Shown: in pieces, positions 1,106 through 50,084 of the stretch
How positions within the stretch are numbered: position 1 is the first letter of the stretch
How the letters are laid out: the number at the start of each line of letters is the position of its first letter
Source: Raja brachyura
Taxonomy: Eukaryota
Reading direction: 5' to 3'
Assembly (NCBI GenBank): GCA_963514005.1
Contig: OY740805.1
Span: 22,878,001 to 22,942,000, forward strand
Length of the DNA: 64,000 bases
Translations under genes and position numbers: made by a program
The notes under the pieces: model-generated
Told to the model about the DNA's origin: nothing
The model's input: only the letters and a program-made list of their open reading frames with translations
Databases searched by the model: none

Positions 1106-1223
1106 CCGTTGTTCCACCGTCACCCTTTTGTGTGGAATCGTGACAGAAGCCTCCTCGTGGCGATCCCCGGAACCGACGACACGATGCACTCTGTGACGTG
1201 TCGGGCGACCAATTCTGTCAACA

Positions 1224-1488
1224 TCAGTCTTCCCGTGGATTTTGAAGCAACAGCAACAAAGAGAAGCAGGAGAAAGCACTGATTGGCTCTAGCCCAAGTG
1301 GGAGGAGAGTTCTCAGTGAGTCAGAGGGGGAGAGCAGTTAAAAAGGAGAGGCAAAGCACAGGCAGACTTCACTCAGTCTTCCCGTGGATTTTGAAGCAAC
1401 AGCAACAAAGAGAAGCAGGAGAAAGCACTGATTGGCTCTAGCCCAAGTGGGAGGAGAGTTCTCAGTGAGTCAGAGGGGGAAAGCAGTT
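1224..1488 (+). repeat. Tandem duplication (149-bp period) in CR1 5' UTR
   Basis: tcagtcttcccgtggattttgaagc...gagtcagaggggg starts at both 1224 and 1373, ~115 bp nearly identical. Confidence 0.9.
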
Positions 1489-1673
1489 CCTCAAAACTGA
1501 GGAATTTGGTTTGTAAATTAGGCAATTGAACAGTCAATATAAGCAAGGCAGCTCTTGGGGAGCGGCCTTGTGAGGGAAGTGCCCTGTGAGTAAAGTGTGA
1601 GTCTTTGGCTCGAGAGTCTTCGGCGAGGAGGCTGCGCAAAATACTGGATAGGGCGAGACTGAGGCAAAAGAAG

Positions 1674-5600: not shown

Positions 5601-5614
5601 GTACGGGATACTGA
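2540..5614 (+). CDS. CR1 ORF2 (apurinic endonuclease + reverse transcriptase)
   Basis: 1024-aa open frame with NARS, ETW, GDFN, SDH (APE) and PGPD, DFQKAFD, PQGSVLGP, FADD (RT); true start codon uncertain. Confidence 0.95.
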   Translation: MGDQHSGRQVCHCYTDGFKLNKGGGVSNGIVEDGVRGKESKAMVNDPRINGEESSQRDRRVCPSVIGIDVKGATCQHNCIRSKSVVKTSLKALCLNARSIRNKVDELKVQIAINDYAIVGITETWLQDDQGWELNIQGYSIFRRDRRKGKGGGVALLVREEINAIERKDISVEDVESIWVELRNSKGQKTLVGTVYRPPNSSIGVGDGIKQEIRNACNKGNTVIMGDFNLHVDWVNQIGRGAEEEDFLECMRDSFLNQHVEEPTREQAILDWVLSNEEGLVSSLVVRGPLGKSDHNMVEFFIRMESDKIKSETRVLNLNKGNFEGMRCELAKIDWQVILKGLTVDVQWKVFKDCMDEVQKLFIPVWQKNKSGKVVHPWITREIRDSIKTKDEAYKFARKSSLPEDWEKFRIQQRRTKGLIRKGKIDYERKLAGNIKTDCKSFYRYVKRKRLVKTNVGPLQSETGELIMGNKDMADQLNNYFGSVFTKEDINNLLEIAVERGSNKMEELSEIQVSREVVLGKLNGLKADKSPGPDSLHPRVLKEVATEIVDALVIIFQNSLDSGVVPEDWRVANVTPLFKKGGREKAGNYRPVSLTSVVGKLLESVIKDGIAAHLESGEIIGQSQHGFTKGKSCLTNLIEFFEDVTSRVDKGEPVDVLYLDFQKAFDKVPHKRLAYKLKAHGIGGSVLMWIENWLADRRQRVGVNGSFSEWQAVTSGVPQGSVLGPQLFTIYINDLDEGIQCNISKFADDTKLGGIVRCEEDAWRLQGDLDRLSEWADAWQMQYNVDKCEVIHFGGKNMRVDYYLNGGRLGKGEMQRDLGVMVHQSLKVGMQVQQAVKKANGMLAFIAKGFEYRSREVLLQLYRVLVRPHLEYCVQFWSPNLRKDILAIEGVQRRFTRLIPGMSGLSYEERLDRLGLYSMEFRRLRGDLIETYKILKGLDKLDAGRLFPMLGESRTRGHSLRIRGNSFRTEMRKTFFTQRVVSLWNSLPQKVVEASSLAIFKRALDVALVAKGIRGYGEKAGTGY

Positions 5615-6079
5615 GTTGGATGATCAGCCATGATCACATTGAATGGCGGTGCAGGCTCGAAGGGCCGAATGGCCTACTCCTGCACCTATTTTCTATGTTT
5701 CTATGTTTCTATGTAACATGTTGGATGACGACAGTAGCCAACAGCGAACTACATGTCGTCTGACACACAAGTGAATGAACCCTTGTTAGACTAATCAACT
5801 GCAGGTTACGACATAAATATGATGTGATGCAACTAATTGACAGTGCAGCATAGAGAGTGCAGCACAGAAACAAGCCCTTTGACCCACTAAGTCCATGCTA
5901 ACCTTTTTGGGACCTGATCTCTTTTTATCTTCCTGATATTTCCAATACCCACCCCTAGATTTTACTATTTAATGACACATGGAGTAATAAATGGTGGCCT
6001 GTGAACCAAATAACTGTCGTAACTCACCTTTGTGGGTGGAATATCTGAATATCATATCATTTCCAAATGTTGATCAGTA

Positions 6080-6370
6080 AGGGCGGCACAGTGGGGCTGT
6101 GATAGAGTTGCTGCCTTAAAGTGCCAGTGCCCCGGGTCCGATCCTGACTATGGGCGCTGCCTGTAGGGAGTTTGTACGTTCTCCCCATGACCAGTGTGGG
6201 TTTTCTCCAAGATCTTCAGTTTCCTCCCATACTCCAAAGACGTAAAGGTTTGTAGGTTAATTGGCTTGATATAAATGTAAATTGTCCTTCGTGTGTAGGA
6301 TAGTGTTAATGTGCGGACTCGTGCCGAAGGGCCTGTTTCCACACTGTATGTCTAAGCTAAACTAAAATAA
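6080..6370 (+). mobile_element. tRNA-derived SINE (HE1-like)
   Basis: gggcggcacagtgg A-box-like head, ccgggtccgatcc B-box-like motif, conserved core, tail gaagggcctgtttccacactgtat..ctaaactaaa. Confidence 0.75.
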
Positions 6371-6720
6371 TCTAAGTTACCTTGACATTTAGAATCATAT
6401 ACAGCATAGAAACAGGCCCTTCAGCCCACCTTATCTATGCCGGCCAAGATGCCCCCTCTAACCTTGACCCACCTACCCATATTTTAGCTTAATTTAATTT
6501 ATTATTAATGTCACGTGAAAATGTTTCGTGTGTGCTATCCAGTCAGTGAAAAAACTACATTACAATGAAGCCGTTCACAATATATAGATACAGGATAAAG
6601 GGTATCATGTTTAGTGCAAATTAAGTCCAATTGGTGTTTTGCTGGTTTCCCTCCAAACCTTTCCTATCCATAGAAATTTCTATTGCTTGACAATATTTGT
6701 ATTCTTTTATTGGTGTCTAG

Positions 6721-6981
6721 GGCCTCACACACTGATCTATTACTACACCCTGAACCACGGGAATACTAATCTACCAGAATATAGTTTCGTGGTTGTTCTG
6801 AATGGTTGTGAGATACAGTATTATGACAAAAACATGGCCATTACAGTTCCAAGACAGAAATGGATGGCAGCTGCATTTGACAGGAATTACTGGGTAACAA
6901 ATACGGTTTCCGAAACTGGTTTCCATGGAATCATCAAAGGGCAAGTCGACGAATGGATGCGGAGGCATAACGAAACAACAA
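6721..6981 (+). CDS. MHC class I alpha1 exon
   Basis: gtctag|GG acceptor, A|gttagt donor; GPHTLIYYYT..PEY..YYD..PRQKWM..YW..RHNET (N86 sequon). Confidence 0.93.
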
Positions 6982-8635: not shown

Positions 8636-9205
8636 GAGAGGAGCTGCTCTGCTGGCGGGGAGGATTTAATGAACTTTTTGGACGTTGGGGAGGATTGAAA
8701 GCATTCCGACTTTGCGTTCAGAGCTTTGTCGGACTGCAGAGACTTTCTTTGTTCAAGGATTCCTCTAATTGGTGAGGATTGTCTGTGTGTTTCTGGAAGG
8801 TCGTAGGAGCGGCAGTGGCTGGCGGAAGACCAAGATTCACTTGAACTGGTGGGAGCTGAGTCTGGAGCGGTGTTTGTGGTCAGTAACATCGGAAAGCTCC
8901 CTCCCACACCGACTTGCCCGGTCCAGGTGTGCTGGGTAAGAACGGCAACAGTGTCTTGGATTTCGTTGAAGCCGGGGAGGCGACGGAGACCTGGGGAAGA
9001 AGCCTCCGGAAGCTCCATTTTTGACGGCGGGAGGATTGACACAGACATTCCTACCTTATCAGGAGGAGACTGCTTCTGTTGCTTTGCCAAGAAAGCCTTC
9101 ACAAGATACTGAACTGCTGCAAGAGAGTGGAGGTGCAGCAACAGCAGAAAGACTGCTTTGATTTTAAAAGTACTGATACTTTGTGTGTTGTGCCACGCCC
9201 TAAAG

Positions 9206-11418
9206 ATGGCGACCCCTCAGAGTTTTGCAGCTGTCGCACGGTCGGCAGTCTCTGAGACTGAGGGCCATGAGTCGATGGGGCGCACACATGGGGTAAAAAT
9301 GTACGTGCAGAGCAACCTGCCCTTCAAGGTCTTTCTAGATGCCCTGGGTGAGACTGTTGGCAAGAAAGCCATAGTCTCGGGCGCGGTGGTCAGTGGGAAG
9401 GTTGTTGTTCTACTGAAGACTGAACAGGCGGTGGCTCTGGCTCTGGAAAGGGGGGTAACAGCAGGTGGGAATTTCGTGGCGGTGGACCCATGGGGGGGTC
9501 CCGTGTTGCCGGTCATTCTGTCCAATTTTCCCACTTTTGTTCCGGATGCGCTCCTGCTCCCACATGTAAGGAAGCTGGGGGAGGTGCGGTCGGGGCTCAC
9601 CAAACTGTTGTATAGGTTTGACGATCATGAGATGCGGCATATATATACGTTCAAGCGTCGCGTGTATATACAGATGGCACAGGGGATGGACACGGAGGGG
9701 AGTTTTGATGTGGAGGTGGATGATTTCTCCTATCGTGTGTTCTGGAATGCGGGCCAAGTGCGTTGTCATGCCTGCAAAAAGGTGGGGCATTTTCGCCGGA
9801 ATTGTCCCAGGACCCGGGATGCCAGTTCCACCACGGTGGCTCGGGAGTCCACTGCTGGCCCATCTGGGGCCGCTGGTTCTACCACCGTGGCCCTGGAAAA
9901 CACTGCTGGCCCATCTGGGGCTGCTGGTTCTATCACAGTGGCCTGGGGGAGCATTGCTGGCCCATCTGGGGCTGCTGGTTCTACCACGGTAGCCCGTGAA
10001 GGCTTTATTCCCCTATCCCCACCCCCCATTCTCCCACCACCCCCATGTCCCGTACCTGTGGAGGTGGACGCAGGTGAAGTGCGTGGGGTGGACAGGGAGG
10101 TTTGGGAGCGTCAGGGGGGGAGGAAAGTCAAGAAAAAGAAGAAAGGCGGCCCCTTGGGCCCAGGGAAGAATAAGGGCCCTAGGGTCCAACGGGGGGCTGG
10201 AAAGGTTAAACAGGTGGATGGTAGTGTGGAGGTCGAGGCTTCCGCAATGGAGCTCACCGTACCACCGAACGCCAGTGGTTGGAAGAGGAGGAGACATGGG
10301 TCCTCTGATACAGAGAAGGGCCCTGAAGTTCAGGAGCAACCTGAATGGGGGCCTTCCCCTCCTGTTGAGGTGGGGGATCTAGGGCACGCTTCCTCTGAGG
10401 GGGTGGATGTCTCTGTAGTGCAGGGACCACCTGAGAGTGGCGATACATTACCCTTGGGGGCTGGTCCCCCAGAGAGCACGTCTGCTGGCTTAGTGGATGA
10501 CCAGGGGCAGCCTGAAGGGGGGACTTGGGTGTAAGGGTGGGTCCCCAGCCTGAGCTCCTCGTCGAGGCTACAAGCCCAGTTGAGTGGTGTGATGCCCCAC
10601 TGGTTGAGGGAGCAAGGGAGACTCCAGTAACATCGGCTCCTGAGGGCCACAGCGAGGTGATTCACCTGGTGGAGGAGGACGGGGACTCTCTGGGTGACGG
10701 TGCTGGGGCGGGAAGCCTGGGTGTGGAGGAGGGCAAGGTCGATTCGGATCGTGTCCTTCGGTCGCACTCTAGACAGGCCCGCTTACAGCAAGGCCCGGAG
10801 ACTTGCTCCGACTTCACGGGTCCCAATCCGGATACAGAGGGCGGTGGAAGCGCACAGGAGACTGGCCAATTAGCAGATAGCTTGCTGCAGTCAGAGGCAC
10901 CGGTACCTGCCCCTGTCACTGATCCTGGGGGTGGGATGGTGACAGAGGAGGGACCGTGTGATGTGGCTGGAACGCCCACCTCACAGGGAGGGGTGTGCGA
11001 GGCAGCTGAAAGTAGCAACCTTCCGGACTTGGGCTCGGACATTGAGTGTGAGGAGGAGGGGTATGCGGAGTCCGTCGACAGTGAGTTGACGGAATGCCCC
11101 GCCCGTGGCCCCGTGTCTCGACTTGTCGAAGTCTGGGAACTTCGGAAGTTCTTAAGGGACACGAGAGGGAGTAGGAACAAGGTGGTTTTGGCTGTGGACC
11201 GCTGGTCGGACCTGAGGGTGCCCATGCGGTCTATTTATGCCATCCTTCAGAAGAAGGGAAAGCAGGCGGGGCTAGTAAGAAATGAGAGGCGCCAGTTCCA
11301 AGAGCTTTTTAAGTCCCTAAAGAGAGGGCAGCAGGCTATGGGCGGCTCCACTCCTTCACCGGGGGCTGGTAAAGATCTAGTGTACGCTCAAAATGAAGCT
11401 CACTATAGCCAGCCTTAA
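9206..11418 (+). pseudogene. Tx1 ORF1 (gag-like, CX2CX4HX4C) with one frameshift near 10520
   Basis: MATPQSFAAV.. CHACKKVGHFRRNC; frame changes between ORFs 9158-10534 and 10525-11418 near a G run. Confidence 0.85.
9826..10000 (+). repeat. 51-bp coding tandem repeat (17 aa, ~3.4 copies) in Tx1 ORF1
   Basis: gctggcccatctgggg at 9854, 9905 and 9956; STTVARESTAGPSGAAG-like units. Confidence 0.9.
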
Positions 11419-23518: not shown

Positions 23519-23794
23519 ATTATCACTATATTCAAGGACAGTTTGGTTGCGAGGTGAACGATCACAGTCCCAATGTAGGGATATTGAAGTTGGCTTATGA
23601 TGGAAGATATGCATTTAGTTTTGATAAGAACACACTAAAGTGGACAGTGCATGATCCAATAGCTGAGCCCTTCAAAGCGAAATGGGACAAGAATGAAAAA
23701 ATGAACCGTTATTTCAAGAGCTTGTTAGAAAATGACTGTGTGGAACTATGGCACACATACTATGCAATTGGAAAGACATACCTGACCAGAGAAG
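23519..23794 (+). CDS. MHC class I alpha2 exon
   Basis: tttcag|AT acceptor, G|gtgagt donor; HYIQGQFGCE..AYDG..FDKNTLKW..KAKW..LENDCVE..YY..GK; C101-C164 pair present. Confidence 0.95.
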
Positions 23795-24746: not shown

Positions 24747-25013
24747 TTTCCCCTGAGGTCACTCTCGCTGCCCGCCCTGATGATCATTCAGTCCTGTACT
24801 GCACTGTGTTTGGATTTTATCCACTGGCCATCAATGTCAGCTGGTTGCAGAATGGTCAACATGTCTCTGAGACCAAATCTTCTGGGGTCATACCCAATAA
24901 CGATGGAACATATCATCTAAAGTCTGTCCTTGAGTATGATCCGTATGATGGGAAACAGTATTCCTGTCATGTCGATCACAGCAGCCTGCCCGGTGGGAAG
25001 ACCATCATCTGGG
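24747..25013 (+). CDS. MHC class I alpha3 (Ig C1) exon
   Basis: ttgtag|TT acceptor, G|gtaaga donor; LYCTVFGFYP..VSW..PNNDGTY..YSCHVDHSSL..W. Confidence 0.96.
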
Positions 25014-25299
25014 GTAAGAACATTAAATATTATTTCATAGATCATCATTATCTTCTGTTGTTTCCATTTTAATCATTATGACTACATCACATATTCCAAG
25101 ATGCTTAAACTTTCTTTGTTTAGTGGTGTTGCTCTAAGTAATCACGTGGTCAGCACCCACTCTCCACATGAGCAGAAGACTTTGTCAACAGAAATTTTAT
25201 CAAACGTAAAAAACTAACCAATATACAAGGAAGGAGTATTTGGGATTCTCAGTGGTGGAACTGAAATCCCATAAATGTATGTTTAAATAAAAAAATGAA

Positions 25300-26045: not shown

Positions 26046-27164
26046 GAAGTAAGTTCCGTGACGCAAGTTACAGCTTCTGCAATGAACAATATAACTGCCT
26101 GACAAACAGCGATCATACCAGATGATTCAATGTATGCTGCACTAACCTACACAAATGCTCACTTTTGAAGATTCCCTCGAACAATGCACAATTAAGCAAT
26201 CTGATGTTTCACTCTGAAGACTGTTGACAAACTCCAAAACTTAATTTCCAACCTATCTATGTATCATCAGCAACCTAGGCTACAGCACCATCAGTCCCTT
26301 CATCTGCTCTTAATGCCAACGATAAGTAGTTCACTTTCTTGCATTGATGCCCAACTTGCAGATGCAGTTTCCCAACCTGAACACTGCTTTAGGACAACTC
26401 TCTGCTTGCTCTTAATTGTTTTTCCATTCATGCTAATTATTACCCCCAGTGTCATAAGCCATGTGCCTTTGCATCAATTGATCAGATATCTTATGAAAAT
26501 CCAGATATTCTGGCGACATCTGGTGGTCGGGCCACTTATTGCTAGAACCCTCGTCAGGGCAGCTGGGTCTATCACGTGACAGGGTTTTCGTGGGAGTTGG
26601 TGATGAGTTCATCGCCAGTTAACTGGTGTGCCTGATTGCAATGGCAGGAACTTTGCTCGTTCTTAAAAAAACGCACATGTGTGCAAAAACTGTATTTCTT
26701 TAAAAAACATTGATTTGTTCACGTTTGGATCTCTACAATATATTGTATTTCTTTTGTTTCCCATTCCAATGTTGTTACCTATTCTGCTTTTCCATCATTT
26801 TGTTTTAGAATTGTAGGCTTTGCACACCTGCAAACTACTGCTGCTCGAATATACATTGTCTACGGGTTCCTGTTGCATTTTCAAAGACTTCTAATCAATT
26901 TCTCAAACAAAGTTTGAAGAAGGGTCCCAAAACGAAACGTCCCCTGTCCATGTGTAAGGATCAACTGCAAGTGCTGGTTTACACTGAAGATGGACACAAA
27001 TTGCTGGAATAACTCAGCTGGTTAGGCAGCATCTCTGGAGAAAAGGAATAGGTGGCATTTCGGGTCGAGACCCTTCTTCATCCTGAAGTCTTCAGACAGT
27101 GCCAATCTACTTAGCTGCACAGCTTAACAATTGATTTGTAAAATTATGCAATCCTATTTTTCAG

Positions 27165-27272
27165 AAGGAAATAGGAAGAAAGACAGGCACATAGGCCTTA
27201 TTGCCGTGTGTGTGCTGATATTGCTGGCTATTGTCTTGGCAGTAATTGTTTGGTGGAGAAAAAAGAGGAGAG
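27165..27272 (+). CDS. MHC class I connecting peptide/transmembrane exon
   Basis: tttcag|AA acceptor, G|gtaag donor; EGNRKKDRHIGLIAVCVLILLAIVLAVIVWWRKKRR. Confidence 0.9.
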
Positions 27273-27665
27273 GTAAGATGGAAATGTGTGATGCACTGTT
27301 GCTAATAAAGGTATTGGGCTTGAATAAATGATTGATCTCAAGTAGGATAAGGCAGCAGCTACACCTGAAATGCCCCGACAGTCACCAATGTCAACTAGCC
27401 TTTGTGCTGTTGTTAAATGTTTCAGATAATCAGATATTTGAAAATTGTGAATTCAGAGTAAAATATATAGGTAAACATTATGGATTCATTGCACCAAATC
27501 CTAGAGATATCAATGAAAAGTACAGCATGCAAGCAGTCCTTTTGGCCCACTGAGGCCATGCCAACCACCTGTTCTCATGAATTCTATCTCATTGCACCTT
27601 CTCATCCAGTCACCCACCCACTAGGCGTAATTTACAGTGGCCAATTAAACTATAAACTGATACAT

Positions 27666-28024
27666 AGAAACATAGAAAATAGGTGCAGGAGTAGGCCATT
27701 CGGCCCTTCGAGCCTGCACCGCCATTCAATGTGATCATGGCTGATCATCCAACTCAGTATCCCGTACCTGCCTTCTCTCAATACCCCCTGATCCCTTTAG
27801 CCACAAGTGCCACATCTAACGCCCTCTTAAATATAGCCAATGAACTGGCCTCAACTACCTTCTGTGGCAGAGAATTCCAGAGACTCACCACTCTCTGTGT
27901 AAAGAATGTTTTCCTCATTTCGGTCCTAAAGGAATTCCCCCTTATCCTTAGACTGTGACCCCTTGTTCTGGACTCCCCCAACATCGGGAACAATCTTCCA
28001 GCATCTAGCTTGTCCAACCCCTTA
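27666..28024 (-). mobile_element. Young 5'-truncated CR1 copy, near-identical to the 3' end of 1225-5714
   Basis: Reverse-complement match to ~5343-5706 (one substitution seen); TSD ATACAT at 27660-27665 and 28025-28030; inserted in a SINE. Confidence 0.92.
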
Positions 28025-28259
28025 ATACATCTTAGGATGTGTGAGAAAACCGGAGCCCCTGGAGGGATCCAATGCGGTTACACGGAGAACGTGCAAACTC
28101 CGCATAGATGGCACTCAAGGTGAAAATTGAGCCCGGGTCTGTGTTGCTGTGAGGCAGCAGCTCTATGAGTTGTGACACTGTGCTGCTCTGTTGGGGCTCG
28201 CACTGCTCATAATCCAAGTCAGCTACGAGGCAGATTGGTTGCAGTTTAACATTTACTAG

Positions 28260-28545
28260 TTTTGTTTAGTTTAATTTAGAGAAACAGGCTCTTCGGCCCA
28301 CCGAGTCTGCGCTGACCAGCAATCCCCGCACATTAACACTATCCTACACACACGCACCAAGCCAATTAACCTACATACCTGTACGTCTTTGGAATGTGGG
28401 AGGAAACCTTAGATCTCGGAGTAAACCCACGCGGTCATGGGGGGGAACGTACAAACTCTGTACAGACAGCATATGTAGTCAGGATTGAACCTGGGTCTCC
28501 GGTGCTGCAAGCGCTGTAATGCAGCAACTCTACCGCTGCGCACAG
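28260..28545 (-). mobile_element. tRNA-derived SINE
   Basis: Reverse complement of the SINE consensus with tttagt tail. Confidence 0.75.
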
Positions 28546-29453
28546 TGGCCGCCTCCGTGGCCACGGTTACAGGAAGACTCAACATTGTGGGAATGTGAGT
28601 AGTGGTGGGAAAAATGGTTCAAGGTGGAAAGCCGATTGAATGAGGAACAACATGACAGGTAAATTACAATGTGAAACAGGGCAGCACGGAGTCAGGGACC
28701 TGAATTAAATACCGACATCGGCTGTTACATCTGTAGACTTTGCATGTTGTTCCTGTGACCATGTGGGTTTCCCCAGGTGCTCTGGTTTCTTCCCACATCC
28801 CCAAAACATGGTTTGGTTGGTTAGTTGTCCCCTAGATTGTGCATGATACAATTTGTGGAGAGCTGATGAGAATATGGGACAAATGTAGGATTAGTGTACA
28901 TGAATGGTTGGTGCCAACTCAATGGGACAAAGGCCATGTTGGTGTATTTCCATGCCTCTTTGTGGTGGAGAAAGATGCTGACTATTTTTGAATTATAAGA
29001 TTGGGAAAGACTGCGAGGGGCAGTAACTCTGAGTAACTCAGGAGGTCAGGCAACATCCCTGGAGACCATGGATAGGTGGTATTCTAGTTGGAGACTCTTC
29101 TGGCAAATTACAGTGGGTATTCCTCCAGTTAAGTCTGACCGTAGTGTGTAGATGCACCTCAACCACTGACTTGCTCAACAAGTGCCACAATTAGTTGAAT
29201 TAAAGTATGTTTGGAGTAACATGCAGCAGTCCTTAAAATCTACCATTTCCCAAATCCCAAGAGAGCTGGATGATCAAGGTTTTAGTGTAAATTCAGTCAT
29301 CTATATCACTCGTTTCTTGCCTGTGATCACACTGTTGTAAGAGATATTCTGGCGACGAATTGCAGTTCACTTTCCTCCTGTGTATAGGAGTTATTGTGTT
29401 GAATATAACAAGTGGAAGGGAAAGTCAATGTAGGATTTAGAGTTTGTACGTAA

Positions 29454-29755
29454 GGCAGCATGGTAGTTCAGCTGGTAGAACTGCTGCCTCACAACGCCAG
29501 AGACCCAGGTTCAATCTGGACCTCGGGTACTGTCTATGTGGAGTTTGCACGTTCTCCTAGTGACGAACTGGGCTTCCTCAGGGAGCTCTGGTTTCCTCCC
29601 ACATCCCAAAGATGAGCGGGGTTTGCATGTAAACATCCTCTGTAAATCACTCTGATAGTGTAGGGAGTGGATGGGAAATCTATTATGAATAGGCGATTGC
29701 TGGTGAGTATGGATTTTCTGGCACAAAGGGCCTGTTTACACACTGCATCACTGTT
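29454..29755 (+). mobile_element. tRNA-derived SINE
   Basis: ggcagcatggtagttcagctggtaga head, ggttcaatc B-box-like motif, aagggcctgttt tail. Confidence 0.7.
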
Positions 29756-32201
29756 TTCAAGATAGTTAGATTTAGCTTTTAGGGCTAAGGGAATCAAGGG
29801 ATATGGGGGAAAAGCCAGAACGGAGTACTGACTTTGGATGATCAGCCATGATTTTATTGAATGGCGGTGCTGGTTCGAAGGGCCGAATAGTCTATTACTG
29901 CACCCATTTTTTATGTTTCTATCTTTCTATTAAATAAACTAAATTGGAAGACAGAAGGTATTGACTGATGCATCTTCACGCCAGCTGTAAATGTCATAAA
30001 CTGTGTGAATTGATTGCAAATGTTATACAATATTATAAACAAAACTGGGTGATCAAAATGACAAGATGGATGAAGAGCAGAGTTTTCATTGAAATAACAG
30101 ACGTGCTGCTTTCTCGAGCACTTGGCCTTGTTTGTTTCATATTTCCTCTTCAAAATACAATGTTCCCTGGCATTGCTGGTCTGAGACACCTAGCAGCGTA
30201 TATTTCCTGAAACCAGGGTTCTACTTTCATGGTATCAAGATGTCTAGCAGTTCCAGCACCCAGATCAGAACCAAGCCATTTCTCACCTTAACCTCTCGCA
30301 AAAACTAAAATTGCAGCAACAATTTAGTCATTGAACATCAACAACATGCACATTTGAATTGAGGCAATGGTTAGCTTATTATCACTGTCAACGAGTCGTG
30401 GTCATGGCTTTCCCATTGTGGTCACTATACGTGAGGGTGATTAACTAACATTTAGCAATGAAACAGAAAGGAATTGGCTTTTCAAACCCACTGAGCCATA
30501 GAGTCATTCGGCATGGAAACAGGTCATTTGCCTCAACTTGGCCTTGCCAACCAAGGTGCCATGTTTAAACTAGACCGCTGTTCCTACAATTGACCCATAT
30601 CTCACTGAACCTTTCCTATCTACAGTATGTACCTGTCCAAGTGTGTTCTAAATGCTTTTTTAATATCTGCCTCAACTCCTTCCCCTGGAATGTTGTTCCA
30701 TATTTCCACTTCCTCTGGTTCCGAGTAACTCGTTTCCTTCTCACCTTAAACCTGAGTCCTCTGGTTCTTGATTACACAAGGCTGGTTAAAACATTCTGTG
30801 CATTCAATCTATCTATGCTCCTTCATTTTATAAAGCTCCATAAGATCACCCCTCAGCCTCTTGCGTGCCAAAGAATAAAGTCCAAGCATGCCCATCCTCT
30901 CCCTGAATCTCAGGCCCTGTTAATGACATCCTTCCGATAGTGGGGTGACAACAACTTAACACAATACTCCGTATGTGGCCTCACCAACATCTTGTACAAC
31001 TGTAGCAGAACATCCCAACTGTTTTATTCAGTACCATGACATGTTATTATGTTCACGATTATTCCGTTATTTGTGCCTGGCCATTTTGACTTTGTCACAT
31101 TTTACTTGTTTATGATATTGTACAAGATTTGCAATCACACTTCCCAATTGACTAAAATTATCCGAATTAACCAAATGCCTACTATGGCATTTAACTTATT
31201 GCATTATATTCAGCGCAGGGTACAAGCTGCAGTTTTTTTTAAAAGGGCAGGTTTTTATTACACACTATGTGGTGTGTGCCTGGAAAGGACTGCCAGGGAT
31301 GGTGGCGTCTGGGGTGCACCTTCGTGTGTGCATGGAGATGCAGGGGTTGGAGGGACATGAATCATTTGCAGGCAGATGATGCCTAACTGGTGTCTGTCCG
31401 ACTGATCTGGAGGCATTTCAATGGGATCTGATAGTCAGGCAGGGAATACTTCCAGTGACCCAATGGTGCTGAGTTCGCTGAATTTTACTGTGCATGGGAA
31501 TACCCCTCTAATAGAGGAACAGGTCCTTTGTCCAAGAACGTTTGTGCTGGACATGATGCAACCTGAGGCAGAATGTCGCAGCTGATAGAGCTGCTGCCTC
31601 AGAGCGTCAGAGACATCAGTTCAATCCTAACCTCGGTTGTCGGCCGTGTGAAGTTTGCATGTTTTCCCTATGACCGCATGGGTTTCCACTGTACTCCAGT
31701 TTCCACATACATACTAATGATGCCAGGGTTTATGGGTTAATTGGTCTGTGTAATTTGACCCTAGTGTGGAAGTGAAAGTTCGATAACATAGAAATTGTGT
31801 GAACAAAACTGTTTGAAGGAGTATTGAGTTTTTTCTTTAGTTTAGAGAGAGAGCATTGAAACAGACACTTCGTCCCACTGAGTCCACACCAACCAACAAT
31901 CACCCACATAATCTAGGGACACAAGTCAATTAACAAACAAACCTGCACGTCTGTCTTTGGAATGTGGGAGGAAACTGGAGCACCCGGAGAAAACCTATGC
32001 AGTCACGTGGATAAGGTACAAATTCCGTACAGACATCACCCTGTCAGGATCAAACCCGGGTGTCTGGCGCTGTGCCATTATATCTGGAAGGTAGATGTTA
32101 CATGCGATGAATCAACAGTTAAAGCGAATAAACAAGTTGCATTTTCTGAGTTCTATTCCCTGCCATTTATTAGTTGTCTAATATTTAATTTCCATCCTCA
32201 G

Positions 32202-32242
32202 ATTATCAAAATATTCAACCAAAGCTGAACGCGCATTGCTAA
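32202..32242 (+). CDS. Predicted MHC class I cytoplasmic exon (DYQNIQPKLNAHC*)
   Basis: tttccatcctcag|AT acceptor in phase 1 matches the TM exon donor; TAA at 32240-32242; ATTAAA at 32275 and AATAAA at 32294 downstream. Confidence 0.75.
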
Positions 32243-33216
32243 CCAATCGCTGAGTAGAAGATTTCATGGATGTGATTAAAATACAGGAACTGAAATAAAT
32301 GGAAATAGTTAAATTAAGTTCATCAAACATGACAGAAATTCTCAATAGACTGCCGTGGATTTGTACAAATTAGAGCTATCTAGCAATTTATGTTGATAAT
32401 AGCTGATATGACTGAGGCCTCAACTCCTTCACTGTGTTTATTCCACACAATTCCCTGTTCTTTTAGAATATACCCAGGCATTATCCACCAATTCACCACC
32501 CCATCATGCCTCTTTAATACATTCATACGGTTCACTCTGTTTCTTGTCATCTCCAAGGGACACAGACCAGTGATTTCAGCCATTCATGGTTAGGCAACAC
32601 TTGCTTATTCCAGAAATCTCTTCTGGGTGATATCCAATATTAATATATCCCTTTCTTAAATCTGAGGACCAAGCTGTGCACAGTGCTCCTGATATGTCCT
32701 GAGCAACATCATGTACCATAATTACAATAGTAACGTACATTTGAATGCCAATATGCTAATCACCTTCTGTGTTGTGTGCTGCACCTACATGCTGGTTTTA
32801 TTGCACTTTAAACACTTGAATCTCTTGTACTCCACTAATTTGCAATCTCCCTCCATTTAGATAATAGCTTCCTTTTAATTGCTCTTACCAGTGTGCGTGA
32901 GCACATATTTTCCATTATTAAACACAATTTGCCACGTTTATGTTAATCTAACAAAGAGTCATAGAGCCATATAGCACGGAAGCAGGTACTTCCACCTAAT
33001 GCTCAAAGCTGAACAAATGCTACATTTAGGTTAGTCACATTTGCCAGCGTTTGACCCACTTTCCTCTCAACATGTTCTATCCATGTACCTGTCCAAGTGT
33101 CTTTTCAATGTTGTTGTTCTACCTTCTCTGGCAGCTCATTCCAAACACCCAGTAACCTCTCAGTAGAAAAGGTTGCCTCTCAGGTTCCCACTAAATCTTC
33201 CTCCTCACCTTAAACC

Positions 33217-39786: not shown

Positions 39787-39979
39787 TGTAGATGTTTAGT
39801 GCATGTCCCTTTAATTGTAGGTTGTGTAGCCACTCCCCTTTCACCAAGTATATTACTGTCTCTCCATCCCTGGTACCTCCTCTAGTAAAACGTGCAGACC
39901 ATGTACAACTAGGGCATCGATATATGTGATTAATAAAGACTCGGTAAAGGAACACTGTGTACGTGTATACTTCTTTACA
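39787..39979 (+). repeat. 5' LTR
   Basis: tgtagatg...ctttaca, contains AATAAA. Confidence 0.95.
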
Positions 39980-40063
39980 TGGTGTCGGTCGTTTCGAATT
40001 GCGCGCCTCCTGTTTATCGGGTTTATTTTTTTTTTTGCCCCAGTTACCCTTCCCTGCCTGGTT

Positions 40064-43000
40064 ATGGCTTCCTCCTGCCGCAAGCCTGAGTCCCTTGTCT
40101 TTGACGACGACATCGCTCACCGGTGGAACGTGTTCCGCCGGGATTTTCGGCATTATGTGGCTATCGTGCACCCGGGAGTTTCCTCTGCCATTAAAGCGTC
40201 GCTGCTATTGAATCTAGCCGGCTCCGAGGCTCTGGAGCGCTCTGAATCGTTTGAGTACGGGCCGAATGAGGACCCTGAGGACCTTGACTGTCTACTGGGG
40301 AAGTTCAACGAGATGTGCGATGTGCCCACGAACTCTATTCTGGAGCGTTTTAAGTTTTTTGGACGTCGTCAGAAACCCGGTGAGTCTGTCGGCAACTTCT
40401 ACGCTGACCTACGGCACCTGGCTAGGCGATGCCAGCTGAATGACGCTACCCCAGAGACCCTGACCCGCGATGTCTTGGTGATTGGTCTACGAAATGAAAA
40501 GCTGCGGTCGGAGCTCCTGTGTAAGGCAGACTTGACTCTCCAGGCTGCCCTGCATGCTGCAAAGATGTCTGAGGCTGTTATCTCTGCTGCACCACCCCCT
40601 GATCATGAGGTTCGGGCAGCTACCGTCGCAACCCGCCGTCCTGCTCAGCAAACTCGCCGTGGGGCCAGCTATGGTTCAAGTTCCAAGCTGGAGAAGCGCT
40701 GCCCGAACTGTAACTTTGTGACTCATCGTTTCAACGTGTGCCCTGCGGTGGGAAAGATTTGTAACTTCTGCAACAAGCCTAACCACTTCTCGTCAGCATG
40801 CAGAGCTAGAAAAAATCCTGCCCAGCAACAGCGCAGGCACTCTAATTACATGGTACGGGATGGTACTGCGTCTGGTTCTTATCACCCTCCTGACAACCTC
40901 CCACTGTCTGATCCGGACTCTTCTCAGAGTGAGCTCAGCGTGTTTTCAGTTAGGAAGGCACCTGCTCGAATAACAGACCCTACTGTGCAAGTTACTGTCA
41001 ATGGTTCTACGTTCTCTGCCAAGGTCGATACTGGGGCCGCCACGAACGTTATGTCTACTAGCCTTTTCAAGAAGATAAGGAATAATGAGCGAGTCACCGT
41101 TGAGCGCTCTGTCCTTCGTGCTTATGGGGGAGGGTTGCTTTTCCCTGTGGGGAAGGCTACCCTGAACTGTGAAGTGCTAGAGACCGTTCGGCCCCTCTCC
41201 TTCTTCCTGGTTAACGAAAAATGTGTTACACTGCTCGGTGTTCGGGCATGCCAAGACCTCGGATTGGTCAATTTTCACCGGGAGATCCGTTTAGTTCAGC
41301 AACCTTTGGACCCGTTAGCCGAGTACCCCGATCGGTTTGACAATGCGCTGGGGATGCTCCCCTGCAGTTACGAGATCTCTCTAAATCCTGACGTGGATCC
41401 AGTTATACGCCCTCCACACCGGGTCTCCTTTGCGATGAAGGATAGGGTCGAGTCCACCCTTCGGGACATGGTGGCTACAGACATTCTGAAAGAGGTGAGC
41501 GAGCCCACTCAGTGGGTCTCCACCATGGTGGTTGCTGCCAAGAAGGACAAGAGTGAGCTACGGATCTGCATCAACCCCAAAGATTTGAACCTGGCTATCA
41601 AGCGCCCGCACTATCCCATGCGTACTGTCGAAGATGTTGCTGCACAGGTTGGCCCTGCCACTGTGTTTTCGGTGCTGGATGCTAAGAGCTCGTTCTGGCA
41701 GATACCGCTAGATGAACAATCGTCCTACCTGACGACCTTTGCCACTCCCTTTGGGAGGTTCCGATTCCTGCGCATGCCGTTCGGGATCAGCTCCGCCAGT
41801 GAAGTTTTCCAGAGGACGATGGAACAGCTGTTTGCGGGACTCCCGTGCGCTATCATTGTAGATGACATCTTGGTGTATGGTAAAGATGTGGAACAGCACG
41901 ACCACAACCTCCGACTAGTTTTGGATCGAGCTCGGGAGGTAAATCTGAAGCTCAACCCCAGTAAATGCCGGTTCCGTGTCCCGGAGGTCACCTATGTGGG
42001 ACACGTCTTCACAGCGTCCGGGCTGAAGCCCGACCCACAGAAGACCGCTGCTATCTCGGAGATGCCTGCTCCTGTGGATGTGCCGAGCCTCCAGCGTTTC
42101 CTTGGCATGGCTAATTATTTGGGAAAATTCATCCCCGATCTGAGCGAGTTGAGTGCCCCTTTAAGAGACTTGGTGGAGAAAGACACTGCATGGTCCTGGT
42201 TCCCGCAACACCAGGCTGCTTTCGATATGCTGCGTTCAAAGCTTGTCTGCACTCCGACGCTGCAATATTTCGATTTGAACCGTCCTATTGTCCTCACGTG
42301 CGATGCTTCAAAGTTCGGGCTGGGTGCTGCTTGTTTGCAAGTTCATGATGGGGTCCAGTTACCCGTGTCCTTCGCGTCCCGCACGATGACTCCAGCTGAG
42401 CAGTGCTATGCCCAGATCGAAAAGGAACTGCTGGCTGTTGTGTTTGCATGTTCAAAGTTTAAGGACTATATCCTGGGCACCGAATTCTCTATTGAGACCG
42501 ACCACCAGCCTCTGGTCACCATCCTCGGCAAGCCGATTCACGCTGCCTCCTCCAGGCTGCAGCGGATGATGCTGCAGCTGCAGCGTTTTACCTTCTCCGT
42601 AGTGTACCGTAGAGGCAAGGACATGTTTATTGCTGACACGCTGACTCGGGCTCCTCTGGCTTCGACCACCCGTCACCCTTACGAGGCTTCAGGTATGATT
42701 GTCCTGAACGTCAACTTTGTTCCTTCAAAACAACTACAGTCCTTAGTTAAACACACTGCTGCTGACGCCTCGCTCCAACAGCTAGCTGCGGTCATTCAAA
42801 GGGGTTGGCCCGAGCGACGTTCTTCCCTGCCCGCCGCGGCAGTGCCCTACTTCCTGGTCCGTGACGAGCTGGTGCTACGAGATGGAGTTATCGTTAAGGG
42901 TCACAAGGTTGTGGTACCTGAGGCTCTTCGCCAACAGTATTTCGACACCGCGCATCGGGGTCATCCTGGCGCCGAGGCCACTCTCTCTATCGCCCAAAGC

Positions 43001-44082
43001 CAGTTTTATTGGCCTGATATGGCTGTGTATTTTCGGGACCGGGTGTCATCTTGCCCTACCTGCAACAGTCTCGCCCCGCAGCAGCAGCGTTTGCCCCTTC
43101 TGCAGCAGCCCGCACCGGACCTGCCATGGTCGGCGCTGGCAACGGACATTTTTGAGTGGCACGGCAAGCACTTCTTGGTGCTTGTCGACTCTTACTCCAA
43201 CTGGTATGAGGTCGACCAACGGCAGCCAATTTACCAGTGCGGAGTTCAAGGACTTTGCTGACCGCTGGAACTTTCGGCATTACACTAGTAGCCCTGAGTA
43301 CCCTCAGAGCAATGGCCTGGCCGAGCGTGCTGTTCGCAGCGCTAAGGACTTGTTGAATCGCTGCCGCGCATCGAAGTCTGACATTTACCTCGCCCTCCTC
43401 AACCTGCGAAACATTTCCCGTGACAGTGTTCTGGGATCCCCGGCGCAGCGCCTCATGTCCCGGGTTTACTCGACCTCCCATTCCGGTGGCCCAGCAGACT
43501 CTTACCCCAGCTGTTGTAAAACCTGCCGTGGTCCGTGAGCGTATTGCTACCAAACAGTCCATTCAGAAGCGATCCCACGACAGGTCTTGCCGTGCCCTGC
43601 CTCCTCTGTCTCCTGGTCAGGTTGTCCGCATGCGTTCCACCTCCGGTCACCCTGGCCTTGCGGTTGTTGTTGGGACGGCTGGTTCACCTCGCTCCTATCT
43701 GGTGAACCTCGATGGTACTGTTTACCGTCGGTCCAGGCGGCACCTCCGCCTGGTGAACGAGCCTCCTCCTCCTCCTCCTGCTGACCCCCATGCTCCCCCT
43801 CTGTCCGCTCTCCCGCCTGTAGCGGTCACTAAACCTGTGCCTGCTCGCCCTGTCCCGGTTCTTCTCCCTGTGCCTGTTCCCGTGCCTCCAGCCGTCTCTT
43901 CCCCATCGCCAGGTCGCTCGCCTCCAATCCCTTTGTCACCACGCAAGTCCCCACATTTTAGTCCTCCTGTCGTGGGGTCTCCCCCGGTGCCCGTTCCTTT
44001 GGGGGGAGAGGGTGTGAGCGGGATTCGTACCCGCTCGGGGCGGATTGTAAGGGCGCCTGACCGTTATGGCGATTATATTTGA
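40064..44082 (+). pseudogene. Gypsy gag-pol (Zn knuckles, protease, RT, RNase H, integrase)
   Basis: Open from ATG 40064 through CxxC knuckles, VDTGA, IVDD, CDAS/ETDH and HHCC; deletion-frameshift at ~43217 and a second frameshift at ~43468 in integrase; ends RTRSGRIVRAPDRYGDYI. Confidence 0.92.
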
Positions 44083-45461: not shown

Positions 45462-46396
45462 TTAAAACACGCTACGTGATCTCTGGTCCGAGGTTGGAAC
45501 TAATTTATTCAAGAAAGTAAACGGATATTTCAGCGTATTCGTCAATGATTCTCTGAACTTTGCCTGAGCCACCGCATAAATAAATGTGTTTGTGCACGAA
45601 CTCAGGCGCTGCAGCATATACCCAGTGTGCTCCATAATGGCGAAAGGATCGTTGTAATCCGTGAGCATGAACTCAACGCCTGCAAATTGTGTGCATATGT
45701 AATGTACAAATGTTACCATCCATAGCAGTATGAAACAGCTTGAGATGGAGAGCAGTAAAATGATCGATTTTCTGCGGTTTACAATCTCCGGATCAGTGCA
45801 ATCCTCGCTTTTCCCGTCCCCCCGGAGTCCCCTCCTTATCCGACTAGCCTGTAAAATATGTCTGGTGGTCAGGGCATTAAGCAGCACAATCAAAAGGAAA
45901 GGTACAGACGGTGTTAAGGTAATGTCGAAGAAGAAGTATGCAACCCATATTGGTAAACTGGAGAGACTTGACTTCACTTTGCAGAACCATGGCACGTTGT
46001 CAATAATCAGCAGATGCTCGTTTTCAAAATAAATAGGGATATTCTGCACAAAGCTTAATCCAAACACAATCACTATTACAATAGCGGCAGTTCTTTCGGT
46101 GCAGTATTTTGCTCTCAGCTTCTGACAACAAATGGCGATGTATCGATCAAATGTGAAGGCAACGGTTAACCAGACCGAACAATCAATGGCTGCGAACACC
46201 AGGGCAATTATGAGGCTGCAGACGGGAGTATAATGCAAGAAGGAAAGCGGAAAATGCATGTCATTAATCTCGTATAATACTACATCAAATATTATCACCA
46301 GTAAGTCTGCAACAGCCATGGCGACAATGTAACGTGTGATGCATTTGGAAAGACCACAGTTCCCACGAGATAGAATCACAATCGCCATGAGATTAC
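45462..46396 (-). CDS. GPR139-like class A GPCR, exon 2
   Basis: ttcttgcag|GT acceptor; GNLMAIVIL, MAVADLL, FDRYIAIC, FILLW, CTNTFIY; open frame to TAA. Confidence 0.9.
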
Positions 46397-46908
46397 CTGC
46401 AAGAATAGAAATATGCGCAGTCACAGAGAATAACCGCTTTGGACAAAATGTTACGTGGAGATTAACTCCAAATATTTCATAAATAAAACACAACGCGTTG
46501 GAGTAACTCGGCAGATCAGGCGGCATCTGTGGAAGGAATGGATTTGCGACATTACCGGTCAGGAGCCTTCTTCAGACTTAAGAAGCGGCCCGACCGGTAA
46601 CGTTGCCTATGGAGTCAAGATTCAAGATTCAAGAGTGTTTTATTGTCGTATGTCCCTGTTAGAGCAATGAAATTGTTACTTGCAGCAGCAGAACTGAATA
46701 TGTAAACATAGGACATTCTAAACAATATAATTAACGAGAGAGACAAAGGTTAGTGTGTGTGTACATACACATATCCACCAATATATCGTCCGAAGAAGGT
46801 CTGGACCCGAAACGTCACCCATTCCTTCTCTCCATGATACCTGCCTCGCTCAATTACTCCAGCCTTTTTTGTCTATCTTCGTTTTAAGCCAGCACCTGCG
46901 AATCCTTC

Positions 46909-46974: not shown

Positions 46975-47160
46975 NNNNNNNNNNNNNNNNNNNNNNNNNN
47001 NNNNNNNNNNNNNNNNNNNNNNNNNNNNNNNNNNNNNNNNNNNNNNNNNNNNNNNNNNNNNNNNNNNNNNNNNNNNNNNNNNNNNNNNNNNNNNNNNNNN
47101 NNNNNNNNNNNNNNNNNNNNNNNNNNNNNNNNNNNNNNNNNNNNNNNNNNNNNNNNNNNN
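46975..47160. other. Assembly gap (186 N) in the GPCR intron
   Basis: Run of N. Confidence 1.
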
Positions 47161-49460: not shown

Positions 49461-50014
49461 CTTAATGAATAAGAACAGCGTTCACCATGTGGTCACTTGT
49501 AGCTGATACGTTTTCAATTATCATGTCTGAATTGTATTCTAGTTTTCTGCTTTATCCTTATTTTCCTTAATAAATACCGATCGCCAATATGTGTATATCC
49601 GTTTTGCCTACATATCATCGTTCCAGTGCTGGAGCGATTTGATGAGAAGAGCATCGCAACATCTTATAAAACATGCTCATAGAGGTAATCACATTTCTTC
49701 TTCGTGCATACTTGAAACGTATTTTACAATGAAACTTCAAAGCTATCATAGACACAAGCTGGAGTAACTCAGCGAGTCAGGCAACATCTAACCCGCGGAA
49801 TAACACCAGCTTTTTGTGTGTATCTTCGGTTTAAACAACTGCAGTTCCTTCCTGCATTTCAAATCCATCATTCCAGGGTTTCAATCTCTCTGATTGTTTC
49901 ACTCGCATTGCAAACTACGCGAGTTTGTTAGTTCCTAGACGGTAAGTTCCTTGTTTCCGTTTGCATTTTCTTTGGTAAAAGCACGAAGTCAACGAATATC
50001 AGTTTCTAACTTAC

Positions 50015-50084
50015 CTGGAATGCCAATCAGTGCGAGAATGGGATAGTAAATTTCCTCAATCTGTGGAATTATAGGTAGCTCCAT
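50015..50084 (-). CDS. GPR139-like GPCR, exon 1 (MELPIIPQIEEIYYPILALIGIP)
   Basis: ATG at 50084, G|gtaagt donor in phase 1, joins exon 2 to give IGIPGNL in TM1; total 334 aa. Confidence 0.88.

What the first reader, a model, noticed from the sequence alone, without database searches (positions are those of the whole stretch)
27165..32242. Elasmobranch nonclassical MHC class I gene with a CD1b-like YQNI endosomal sorting tail
Seen: the TM exon ends in phase 1 (..WWRKKRR G|gtaag). A pyrimidine-rich acceptor 4.9 kb downstream (32201) continues in phase to DYQNIQPKLNAHC*, with poly(A) signals 30-55 bp later. The ORF track misses this exon. Established: human CD1b ends RRRSYQNIP, and its YxxPhi motif YQNI recruits AP-2/AP-3 for lysosomal trafficking and lipid loading; classical class I tails instead carry a YxxA-type tyrosine. 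Inference: this molecule may traffic like CD1 and sample non-peptide antigen in endosomes, by homology or convergence. This is the best candidate for an unusual immune system component in the window.
Basis: partly seen in the sequence, partly recalled or inferred. Interest (0 to 1): 0.85.

Follow-up and report, generated by a model that had tools for sequence, protein, structure and literature searches.

The report
Skate UGA class I gene, YQNI tail
This is the skate copy of UGA, a known shark and ray MHC class I-like gene said to bind lipids like CD1, and its short tail carries a tyrosine sorting motif conserved in most sharks and rays, which suggests but does not prove CD1-like traffic through endosomes.

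Summary
The transmembrane exon (27165-27272) ends in phase 1. The exon at 32202 continues it to give the tail RKKRR-DYQNIQPKLNAHC-stop, with ATTAAA and AATAAA 33 and 52 bases after the stop. The same junction and tail occur in RefSeq orthologues of three other skates. They also occur in three 1.4-3.5 kb Logan contigs that each hold the whole 334-residue reading frame, so these must be spliced RNA.

The gene is not a new kind. Its alpha1 and alpha2 exons match PDB 9CH4, "shark nonclassical MHC class I, UGA" (E about 2e-35 each; next hits 1e-7 and 3e-14). A 2025 review calls UGA and UFA CD1-like lipid binders, citing a personal communication.

A Y-x-x-I/V motif sits 6-8 residues after the membrane in 11 other species as well as the window, both rays and galeomorph sharks. 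Only 1 of 50 other class I relatives has one. Models from two squalomorph sharks lack it.

By sequence the ectodomain is nearer MR1 and classical class I than CD1, so the likeness to the CD1b tail (RRRSYQNIP) may be convergent. Trafficking itself is inferred. No read evidence was possible for this window.

The parts
6721..6981 (+). alpha1 exon (261 bp, phase 1 in and out; donor A|gttagt)
   Evidence: 74-76% identical to the skate orthologues over the tblastn alignment, which also runs into the intron. Best PDB hit is 9CH4 (UGA), E 2.3e-35.
23519..23794 (+). alpha2 exon (276 bp, phase 1)
   Evidence: Pfam MHC_I, 9.7e-15. 86-88% identical to the skate orthologues in tblastn. Best PDB hit is 9CH4, E 1.9e-35.
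24747..25013 (+). alpha3 exon (267 bp, Ig C1-set)
   Evidence: C1-set, 3.7e-19. 89-90% identical to the skate orthologues.
27165..27272 (+). connecting peptide, transmembrane segment and basic stop-transfer exon, ending ...VIVWWRKKRR plus G of a split codon; donor gtaag
   Evidence: 97% identical to Amblyraja radiata and 89% to Leucoraja erinacea and Rhinoraja longicauda.
27273..32201 (+). last intron (4929 bp), with repeat-derived ORFs and no further coding exon
   Evidence: orthologous proteins pass directly from the TM exon to the tail exon.
32202..32242 (+). coding part of the last exon: (D)YQNIQPKLNAHC and stop TAA at 32240-32242
   Evidence: Orthologous tails are DYQNIPPNQNVPC, DYQNIQPNQNVPC and DYQTIQPNQNMRC.
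32204..32215 (+). codons of the YQNI (Y-x-x-hydrophobic) motif; the Tyr is the 7th residue after the last hydrophobic TM residue
   Evidence: Conservation is shown.
32275..32299 (+). two poly(A) signals, ATTAAA at 32275 and AATAAA at 32294

Best explanation
The window holds the skate orthologue of UGA, an old, conserved, nonclassical MHC class I lineage of sharks and rays. Five of its exons lie in the window: alpha1, alpha2, alpha3, TM, and tail plus 3'UTR. The leader exon lies outside it. The gene encodes a type I membrane protein with an 18-residue cytoplasmic tail, RKKRRDYQNIQPKLNAHC. Shown here: the exon structure, the TM-to-tail junction (through orthologous mRNA-sized contigs and RefSeq models), membership of the UGA lineage, and conservation of Y-x-x-I/V at a fixed short distance from the membrane. 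Inferred: the motif is a tyrosine-based sorting signal read by the mu subunits of clathrin adaptors, AP-2 at the cell surface and possibly AP-3 in endosomes. On this reading UGA is taken up from the surface and passes through late endosomes or lysosomes. There it would exchange its ligand and return to the surface, as CD1b, CD1c and CD1d do. The ligand is said to be lipid, according to a review that cites unpublished structural and mass-spectrometry work. The short distance from the membrane, and in sharks the position at the very C-terminus, are those of lysosome-directed signals such as the one in LAMP-1.
For: Gene and splice. Orthologues carry the same junction: Amblyraja radiata XP_032898133.1, Leucoraja erinacea XP_055521885.1, and three Logan contigs of 1435-3455 bases that each encode the full 334 residues. 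In the window the same exons span more than 25 kb, so those contigs must be spliced RNA.

Lineage: the window's alpha1 and alpha2 exons hit 9CH4 at 2.3e-35 and 1.9e-35, against 1.4e-7 and 3.3e-14 for the next chains. The title of 9CH4 is 'Crystal structure of shark nonclassical MHC CLASS I, UGA'. The Stegostoma tigrinum member of the same alignment matches 9CH4 at 6.7e-170, about 89% identical by my count of the printed alignment, and ends in GYNVI.

Motif conservation: skates have YQNI or YQTI, the sawfish YENI, the manta YENI, the stingray YESI, and five galeomorph sharks end in YNAV, YNVI, YNTV or YNVV. That is all 14 UGA sequences with a complete tail, from 11 species, plus the window. Among other class I relatives with a TM segment and tail, 1 of 50 has such a motif and that one is an aberrant model; 9 of 50 have the classical YxxA. 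Tyr and the hydrophobic residue are fixed while the two middle residues vary, which is the pattern expected of a Yxx-hydrophobic signal.

Literature: CD1b, CD1c and CD1d tails carry YXXZ motifs that bind adaptor proteins and drive recycling to intermediate and late endosomes; human CD1b is RRRSYQNIP and pig CD1d RRRVYQNIQ (PMC5002277). UGA and UFA are described as CD1-like lipid binders (PMC12562908). LAMP-1 targeting to lysosomes depends on the spacing of its tyrosine motif from the membrane (PMC2199866; title and abstract).
Against: There are no trafficking, adaptor-binding or ligand data for any UGA tail in the papers I could reach, and the primary UGA paper is not in the library. No reads could be laid on this window, so expression and splicing in this species rest on orthologues. 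The available models from two squalomorph sharks lack the motif: Heptranchias perlo isoform X2 ends RRRRDAA, and one Pristiophorus japonicus model has AFQIY with Phe where the Tyr should be. Two Pristis pectinata paralogues also lack it. These may be real losses or mis-predictions of a very small last exon. The groove keeps six of the eight classical peptide-end anchors, so a peptide ligand is not excluded by sequence.
Confidence: 0.7

Rival explanations
1. The conserved tyrosine motif drives uptake, turnover or polarised (basolateral) sorting of UGA in general. It is not part of an antigen-sampling route through lysosomes.
For: Yxx-hydrophobic signals serve many routes (PMC2121048, listed). 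The sequence alone does not say which adaptor reads the motif. The groove keeps six of eight peptide anchors.
Against: The motif lies only 6-8 residues from the membrane, and in sharks at the very C-terminus. That is the layout of lysosome-directed signals such as LAMP-1 (PMC2199866) and of CD1b-d tails. UGA is reported to bind CD1d-type lipids.
Confidence: 0.15
2. The tyrosine is a phosphorylation or SH2-docking site, for example a pY-x-N Grb2-type site in YQNI and YENI, so the tail signals rather than sorts.
For: YQN and YEN fit pY-x-N in most rays. The motif definition is from my own knowledge.
Against: Asn at +2 is not conserved: there is YQTI in Rhinoraja, YESI in Hemitrygon, and YNAV, YNTV and YNVV in sharks. 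The residues that are conserved are Y and I/V at +3. There is no ITIM-type residue at -2, where R, K or Q is found.
Confidence: 0.07
3. This particular locus is a dead or silent copy. The leader exon is not in the window, and the intron between alpha1 and alpha2 is 16.5 kb and holds a full LINE.
For: No leader-like sequence was found in 1-6720. No RNA run could be laid.
Against: All five visible exons are open, in phase, and flanked by usable splice sites. They are 74-97% identical to expressed orthologues in tblastn. Every junction residue matches the orthologues (NETxN|YHY, TRx|VSPEV, IIW|EGN, RR|DYQ). The leader may simply lie upstream of the window start.
Confidence: 0.06

Closest known systems
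Shark UGA (PDB 9CH4, 'shark nonclassical MHC class I, UGA', released 2026-03-18)
   Same: Same lineage. The window's alpha1 and alpha2 exons hit it at about 2e-35 each, far above any other chain. The Amblyraja orthologue hits it at 8.6e-118, with 56% identity over 244 aligned residues in the structural alignment. The lineage-wide changes T143 to F/M/L and Y159 to L are shared.
   Different: The crystallised chain is the 268-residue ectodomain and has no tail. The window is a skate copy, whereas the crystallised protein is closest to an orectolobiform shark. Ray tails carry eight extra residues after the motif and end in a conserved Cys.
Human CD1b (tail RRRSYQNIP); also pig CD1d (RRRVYQNIQ) and horse CD1c (SYQNIQ...)
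   Same: Identical YQNI core directly after a run of basic residues. A short tail encoded by a small last exon together with the 3'UTR, in the six-exon layout shared by CD1 and MR1 (PMC5002277). Reported lipid binding.
   Different: By sequence the ectodomain is not CD1-type. Pfam assigns MHC_I (1.6e-20), with no MHC_I_3 hit for the Amblyraja orthologue. No CD1 chain appears among the listed PDB hits, while MR1 and bird and fish classical class I do. Homology of the tails is unproven.
LAMP-1 type lysosomal signal (GYQTI at the C-terminus)
   Same: A Yxx-hydrophobic motif 6-8 residues from the membrane, at the very C-terminus in shark UGA. Stegostoma has GYNVI.
   Different: An unrelated protein. 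Skate and ray UGA tails extend beyond the motif.
Atlantic cod MHC class I clade 1 (YQPL plus a dileucine-type motif; PMC3760826)
   Same: A fish class I molecule that has an endosomal sorting motif in its tail.
   Different: A recent change within classical-type teleost genes, proposed to stand in for the lost MHC II. The motif lies further from the membrane. It is not an old dedicated lineage.
MR1
   Same: The nearest solved relatives after UGA by sequence. RefSeq names several UGA orthologues 'MR1-like'. Same six-exon layout.
   Different: Only 25-28% identity in the structural alignment. The MR1-like protein in the control set has no Yxx-hydrophobic motif near the membrane (P0146; I identified it as MR1-like by eye).

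Membership tests
Elasmobranch UGA lineage | alpha1/alpha2 sequence closest to the named UGA reference, with a clear gap to other class I | tested here: met
   9CH4 at 2.3e-35 and 1.9e-35 against 1.4e-7 and 3.3e-14 for the next chains. The title of 9CH4 is given.
Elasmobranch UGA lineage | One chain of best-hit orthologues through rays and sharks that includes the crystallised protein's close relative | tested here: met
   55-94% identity across 12 species; 89%, 73% and 72%, then 44% or less; the Stegostoma member matches 9CH4 at 6.7e-170.
Elasmobranch UGA lineage | Shared groove substitutions (T143 to hydrophobic, Y159 to Leu) with Y7, Y59, K146, W147 and Y171 kept | tested here: met
   the window has F143 and L159. 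L159 is invariant in 15 of 15 relatives.
Elasmobranch UGA lineage | Linkage to the MHC class Ib cluster; single or low copy (PMC10751288, PMC12562908) | not testable with these tools
   The window holds no MHC marker gene, only repeats and a GPR139-like gene. Unchecked scan notes place other nonclassical class I genes 1.1 and 4.7 Mb away on the same piece.
Elasmobranch UGA lineage | Lipid ligand | not testable with these tools
   Known only from a personal communication cited in PMC12562908.
CD1 family | CD1-type alpha1-alpha2 domain by sequence (Pfam MHC_I_3) | tested here: not met
   MHC_I at 1.6e-20 and no MHC_I_3 hit at E 0.01 or better for the Amblyraja orthologue. Twelve of 16 lineage members give only weak MHC_I_3 hits (best 5.6e-7, against 1.2e-27 for MHC_I). 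That MHC_I_3 is the CD1-type domain is from my own knowledge.
CD1 family | CD1 among the nearest solved relatives | tested here: not met
   no CD1 chain is listed. MR1, ZAG and classical class I are.
CD1 family | Short tail with YXXZ after basic residues, on a small last exon | tested here: met
CD1 family | Deep hydrophobic lipid-binding groove | tested here: inconclusive
   The AlphaFold model was poor (mean pLDDT 62.7; the alpha1 helix region was below 50). Only T143F and Y159L point towards a more hydrophobic groove.
Tyrosine-based Yxx-hydrophobic sorting signals | Consensus Y-x-x-(I/L/M/F/V) on the cytosolic side, close to the membrane | tested here: met
   the Tyr is the 6th to 8th residue after the last hydrophobic TM residue in all 14 UGA sequences, and the 7th in the window.
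Tyrosine-based Yxx-hydrophobic sorting signals | Y and the hydrophobic residue constrained while the x positions drift | tested here: met
   the middle pairs are QN, QT, EN, ES, NA, NV and NT.
Tyrosine-based Yxx-hydrophobic sorting signals | Binding to AP mu subunits; Tyr-dependent internalisation | not testable with these tools
   Needs a bench test.

The most novel reading that the evidence does not exclude
The UGA tail exon and the CD1 tail exon are truly homologous. On that reading, a class I-like lipid presenter that is sent through endosomes by a membrane-proximal Yxx-hydrophobic tail already existed in the common ancestor of jawed vertebrates, and CD1 descends from a UGA/UFA-like gene rather than having gained its tail independently.
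Probability: 0.15. Interest if true: 0.75.

Novelty: new member of a known kind. Interest (0 to 1): 0.45.

Why it matters
CD1 was long thought to be limited to reptiles, birds and mammals. Recent work, still mostly cited as unpublished, says sharks and rays have CD1-like lipid binders, UFA and UGA. If UGA also carries the trafficking signal that sends CD1b, CD1c and CD1d into late endosomes, then two things would date back to early jawed vertebrates or have arisen twice: the binding groove, and the cell-biological route of lipid antigen sampling. The tail is 18 residues long and easy to test with reporter chimeras. On the practical side, the case shows that very small last exons of class I-like genes can be placed correctly from orthologous transcripts even when 5 kb of repeats lie in between.

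Tried and rejected
- **Reads.** There is therefore no read evidence. No letters of those positions were sent to any database search afterwards; only local scripts read the window file.
- **Leader exon.** It was not found in 1-6720 by tblastn or Smith-Waterman.
- **Primary literature.** Four searches for UGA, UFA or a shark CD1-like molecule found only a review and a 2023 paper that mention them in passing. The two J Immunol papers on other shark class Ib lineages are not held.
- **Structure.** The AlphaFold model built from a 16-sequence alignment was too weak for groove analysis. It served only to obtain the title of 9CH4.
- **Spliced model.** The window's exons were never joined. Each exon was searched by reference, and database orthologues stood in for the full-length protein.
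- **Alternative 3' ends rejected.** Read-through of the TM donor would give RRGKMEMCDALLLIKVLGLNK-stop. The other in-phase acceptors were also considered. None has support from orthologues.
Full report
**What is in the sequence.**
The finding's coordinates are exact. The TM exon begins after ...ttttcag at 27165. It encodes EGNRKKDRH, a 23-residue hydrophobic segment and RKKRR, and ends with a lone G before gtaag at 27272. After an intron of 4929 bases, an acceptor (...ttccatcctcag) precedes 32202. G plus AT gives Asp, followed by YQNIQPKLNAHC and TAA at 32240-32242. ATTAAA lies at 32275 and AATAAA at 32294. The sequence alone would not have been enough. Between 27300 and 33500 there are 15 other in-phase acceptors with pyrimidine-rich tracts, and four of them are followed by a Yxx-hydrophobic match.

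**The rest of the gene.**
- The alpha3 exon is 24747-25013 and the alpha2 exon is 23519-23794. Pfam gives C1-set at 3.7e-19 and MHC_I at 9.7e-15.
- The alpha1 exon lies much further upstream, at 6721-6981. A 16.5 kb intron holding a full LINE (ORFs at 9158-14434) separates it from alpha2.
- All exons are in phase 1, and every junction codon reproduces the orthologues' residues.
- No leader exon is present in 1-6720; it probably lies upstream of the window.
- No second class I gene is in the window.

**Support for the splice from relatives.**
- A search with the alpha2 exon against 1.84 billion representatives found three close hits (89%, 73% and 72% identity) and then nothing above 44%.
- The cluster of the best hit holds RefSeq proteins of Leucoraja erinacea and Amblyraja radiata. 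It also holds three Logan-derived proteins of 334 residues, from contigs of only 1435, 1992 and 3455 bases.
- All of these run ...WWRK(K/N)RR-DYQNI(Q/P)PNQNVPC. The same exons span more than 25 kb in the window, so contigs that short holding the whole reading frame must be spliced RNA.
- tblastn puts the orthologues' TM exon on 27164-27271 and their last 13 residues on 32201-32239, with nothing in between.

**Which lineage it is.**
- The Amblyraja orthologue (341 residues) finds PDB 9CH4 at 8.6e-118, and then MR1 and bird and fish classical class I at about 1e-48 to 1e-44.
- The window's own alpha1 and alpha2 exons, searched one at a time by reference, give 9CH4 at 2.3e-35 and 1.9e-35, against 1.4e-7 and 3.3e-14 for the next chains.
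- A structure search returned the entry's title: "Crystal structure of shark nonclassical MHC CLASS I, UGA", released 2026-03-18.
- The Stegostoma member of the same orthologue set matches 9CH4 at 6.7e-170, about 89% identical by my count.
- The window gene is therefore the skate UGA.
[quoted passage not shown] It adds that crystal structure and mass spectrometry suggest lipids like those of human CD1d, citing a personal communication (PMC12562908).
- A 2023 paper mentions UFA as CD1-like, also from unpublished data (PMC10751288).
- I found no primary paper on UGA in the library. I therefore cannot say whether its tail has already been described.

**The tail across the lineage.**
A search with the Amblyraja protein returned orthologues from 12 species. 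Their tails are:

| Group | Species | Tail after the basic run |
|---|---|---|
| Skate | This window | DYQNIQPKLNAHC |
| Skate | Amblyraja radiata | DYQNIPPNQNVPC |
| Skate | Leucoraja erinacea | DYQNIQPNQNVPC |
| Skate | Rhinoraja longicauda | DYQTIQPNQNMRC |
| Sawfish | Pristis pectinata | AYENIRANQNLRC |
| Manta | Mobula birostris | DYENIPAHRNVNC |
| Stingray | Hemitrygon akajei | DYESIRAHRRVNC |
| Galeomorph shark | Heterodontus francisci | AYNAV |
| Galeomorph shark | Stegostoma tigrinum | GYNVI |
| Galeomorph shark | Scyliorhinus torazame | DYNTV |
| Galeomorph shark | Cetorhinus maximus | DYNVV |
| Galeomorph shark | Mustelus asterias | EYNAV |

- In every one the Tyr is the 6th to 8th residue after the last hydrophobic TM residue, and the residue at +3 is Ile or Val. 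The two residues between them vary.
- In a control, all 14 UGA sequences have a Yxx-hydrophobic motif in the first 16 tail residues. Among other class I relatives with a recognisable TM segment and tail, 1 of 50 does, and that one is an obviously aberrant model. Nine of the 50 have the classical YxxA.
- There are exceptions. Heptranchias perlo isoform X2 ends RRRRDAA. The Pristiophorus japonicus models end differently, and one has AFQIY with Phe at the Tyr position. Two Pristis paralogues lack the motif. Both exceptional shark genera are squalomorphs. This could be a real loss, or a mis-prediction of an exon that codes only five residues.

**How it most likely works.**
The tail has the form of a tyrosine-based sorting signal. 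In mammals such YXXZ motifs in CD1b, CD1c and CD1d bind adaptor proteins and drive recycling from the surface to intermediate and late endosomes, where lipids are exchanged (PMC5002277). Human CD1b is RRRSYQNIP, pig CD1d is RRRVYQNIQ and horse CD1c begins SYQNIQ. The short spacing from the membrane, and the C-terminal position in sharks, resemble LAMP-1, whose lysosomal targeting depends on that spacing (PMC2199866). I therefore take the most likely mechanism to be adaptor-mediated uptake and passage through late endosomes or lysosomes, ligand exchange there, and return to the surface. The shown steps are the gene structure, the lineage and the conservation. The inferred steps are adaptor binding, the route and the ligand.

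**Is it CD1?**
By sequence it is not.
- Pfam assigns MHC_I (1.6e-20), with no CD1-type MHC_I_3 hit for the Amblyraja protein. Twelve of 16 lineage members give only weak MHC_I_3 hits.
- No CD1 chain appears among the listed PDB hits, whereas MR1, ZAG and classical class I do.
- The groove keeps Y7, Y59, K146, W147 and Y171, and a basic or polar residue at 84. It has Phe (or Met/Leu) for T143 and an invariant Leu for Y159.
- The exon layout, with one TM exon and one small exon for tail plus 3'UTR, is the six-exon plan that PMC5002277 describes for CD1 and MR1.
- The tail likeness to CD1b is real, but it may be convergent. Four residues after a basic stop-transfer run are a small target.

**Limits.**
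- The AlphaFold model of the orthologue was poor (mean pLDDT 62.7), so I make no claim about groove shape.
- No tree against CD1, PROCR or the named shark lineages was built, for want of tool-supplied named sequences.
- The window's exons were never joined into a spliced protein; each exon was searched by reference and database orthologues were used for full-length work.
- The N run at 46975-47160 was left alone.

**Verdict.**
The object is the skate member of a lineage that specialists already know and have crystallised, and RefSeq already carries this tail in related skates. What may be new is the lineage-wide conservation of a CD1b- or LAMP-like sorting motif. That makes a CD1-like endosomal route in cartilaginous fish directly testable. 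Interest is moderate.

Noticed in passing
window 45465-46571 (-) and 50013-50084 (-): A GPR139-like receptor gene lies on the minus strand downstream of UGA. Its large exon is 59% identical to a Leucoraja 'probable GPR139' protein, and a small first exon is 71% identical to a Leucoraja exon. In Leucoraja a GPR139-like gene sits beside UGA, and RefSeq isoforms X1-X4 fuse the two genes; X5 carries only that small exon after the TM exon. Here the orientation is opposite.
   Followed up: partly
window 25014-25072 (+): Read-through of the alpha3 donor gives GKNIKYYFIDHHYLLLFPF-stop. A Leucoraja RefSeq model (XP_055486429.1, 311 residues) ends in the near-identical GKNVKYSFIDNHYLLLFPF. This is either a conserved soluble isoform made by intron retention or a shared annotation artefact in slowly evolving intron sequence.
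   Followed up: no
Leucoraja protein P0034 (XP_055486430.1), not in the window: A second, UGA-like class I gene lies next to a UGA copy in Leucoraja; the accession numbers are consecutive and both are on the same 127 kb contig. Its best PDB hit is also 9CH4 (2.9e-60), and its predicted tail has no Yxx-hydrophobic motif. It may be UFA or another paralogue.
   Followed up: partly
window 32228-32239 and the orthologous tails: All ray UGA tails are exactly 13 residues on the last exon and end in N-x-x-Cys at the C-terminus. The shark tails stop right after the motif. The conserved terminal Cys could be a lipidation site, as discussed for CD1a and CD1c tails in PMC5002277, but this is untested.
   Followed up: no
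window 1-6720: No leader or signal-peptide exon of the UGA gene was found. The region is filled by a LINE (long ORF at 2537-5611) and a SINE-like element (about 6070-6330).
   Followed up: partly
window 9158-14434 (+), 39926-43261 (+), 53722-56853 (-): Large retroelement ORFs. A LINE with a 458-residue ORF1 and a 1013-residue endonuclease/reverse-transcriptase ORF sits inside the alpha1-alpha2 intron. There is also a gag-pol-like ORF of 1111 residues, and a further LINE on the minus strand.
   Followed up: no
Heptranchias perlo and Pristiophorus japonicus UGA models (P0168, P0002, P0003, P0173): The squalomorph shark models lack the tyrosine motif, and one has Phe in place of Tyr. This is either a lineage-specific loss or a missed mini-exon.
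   Followed up: no
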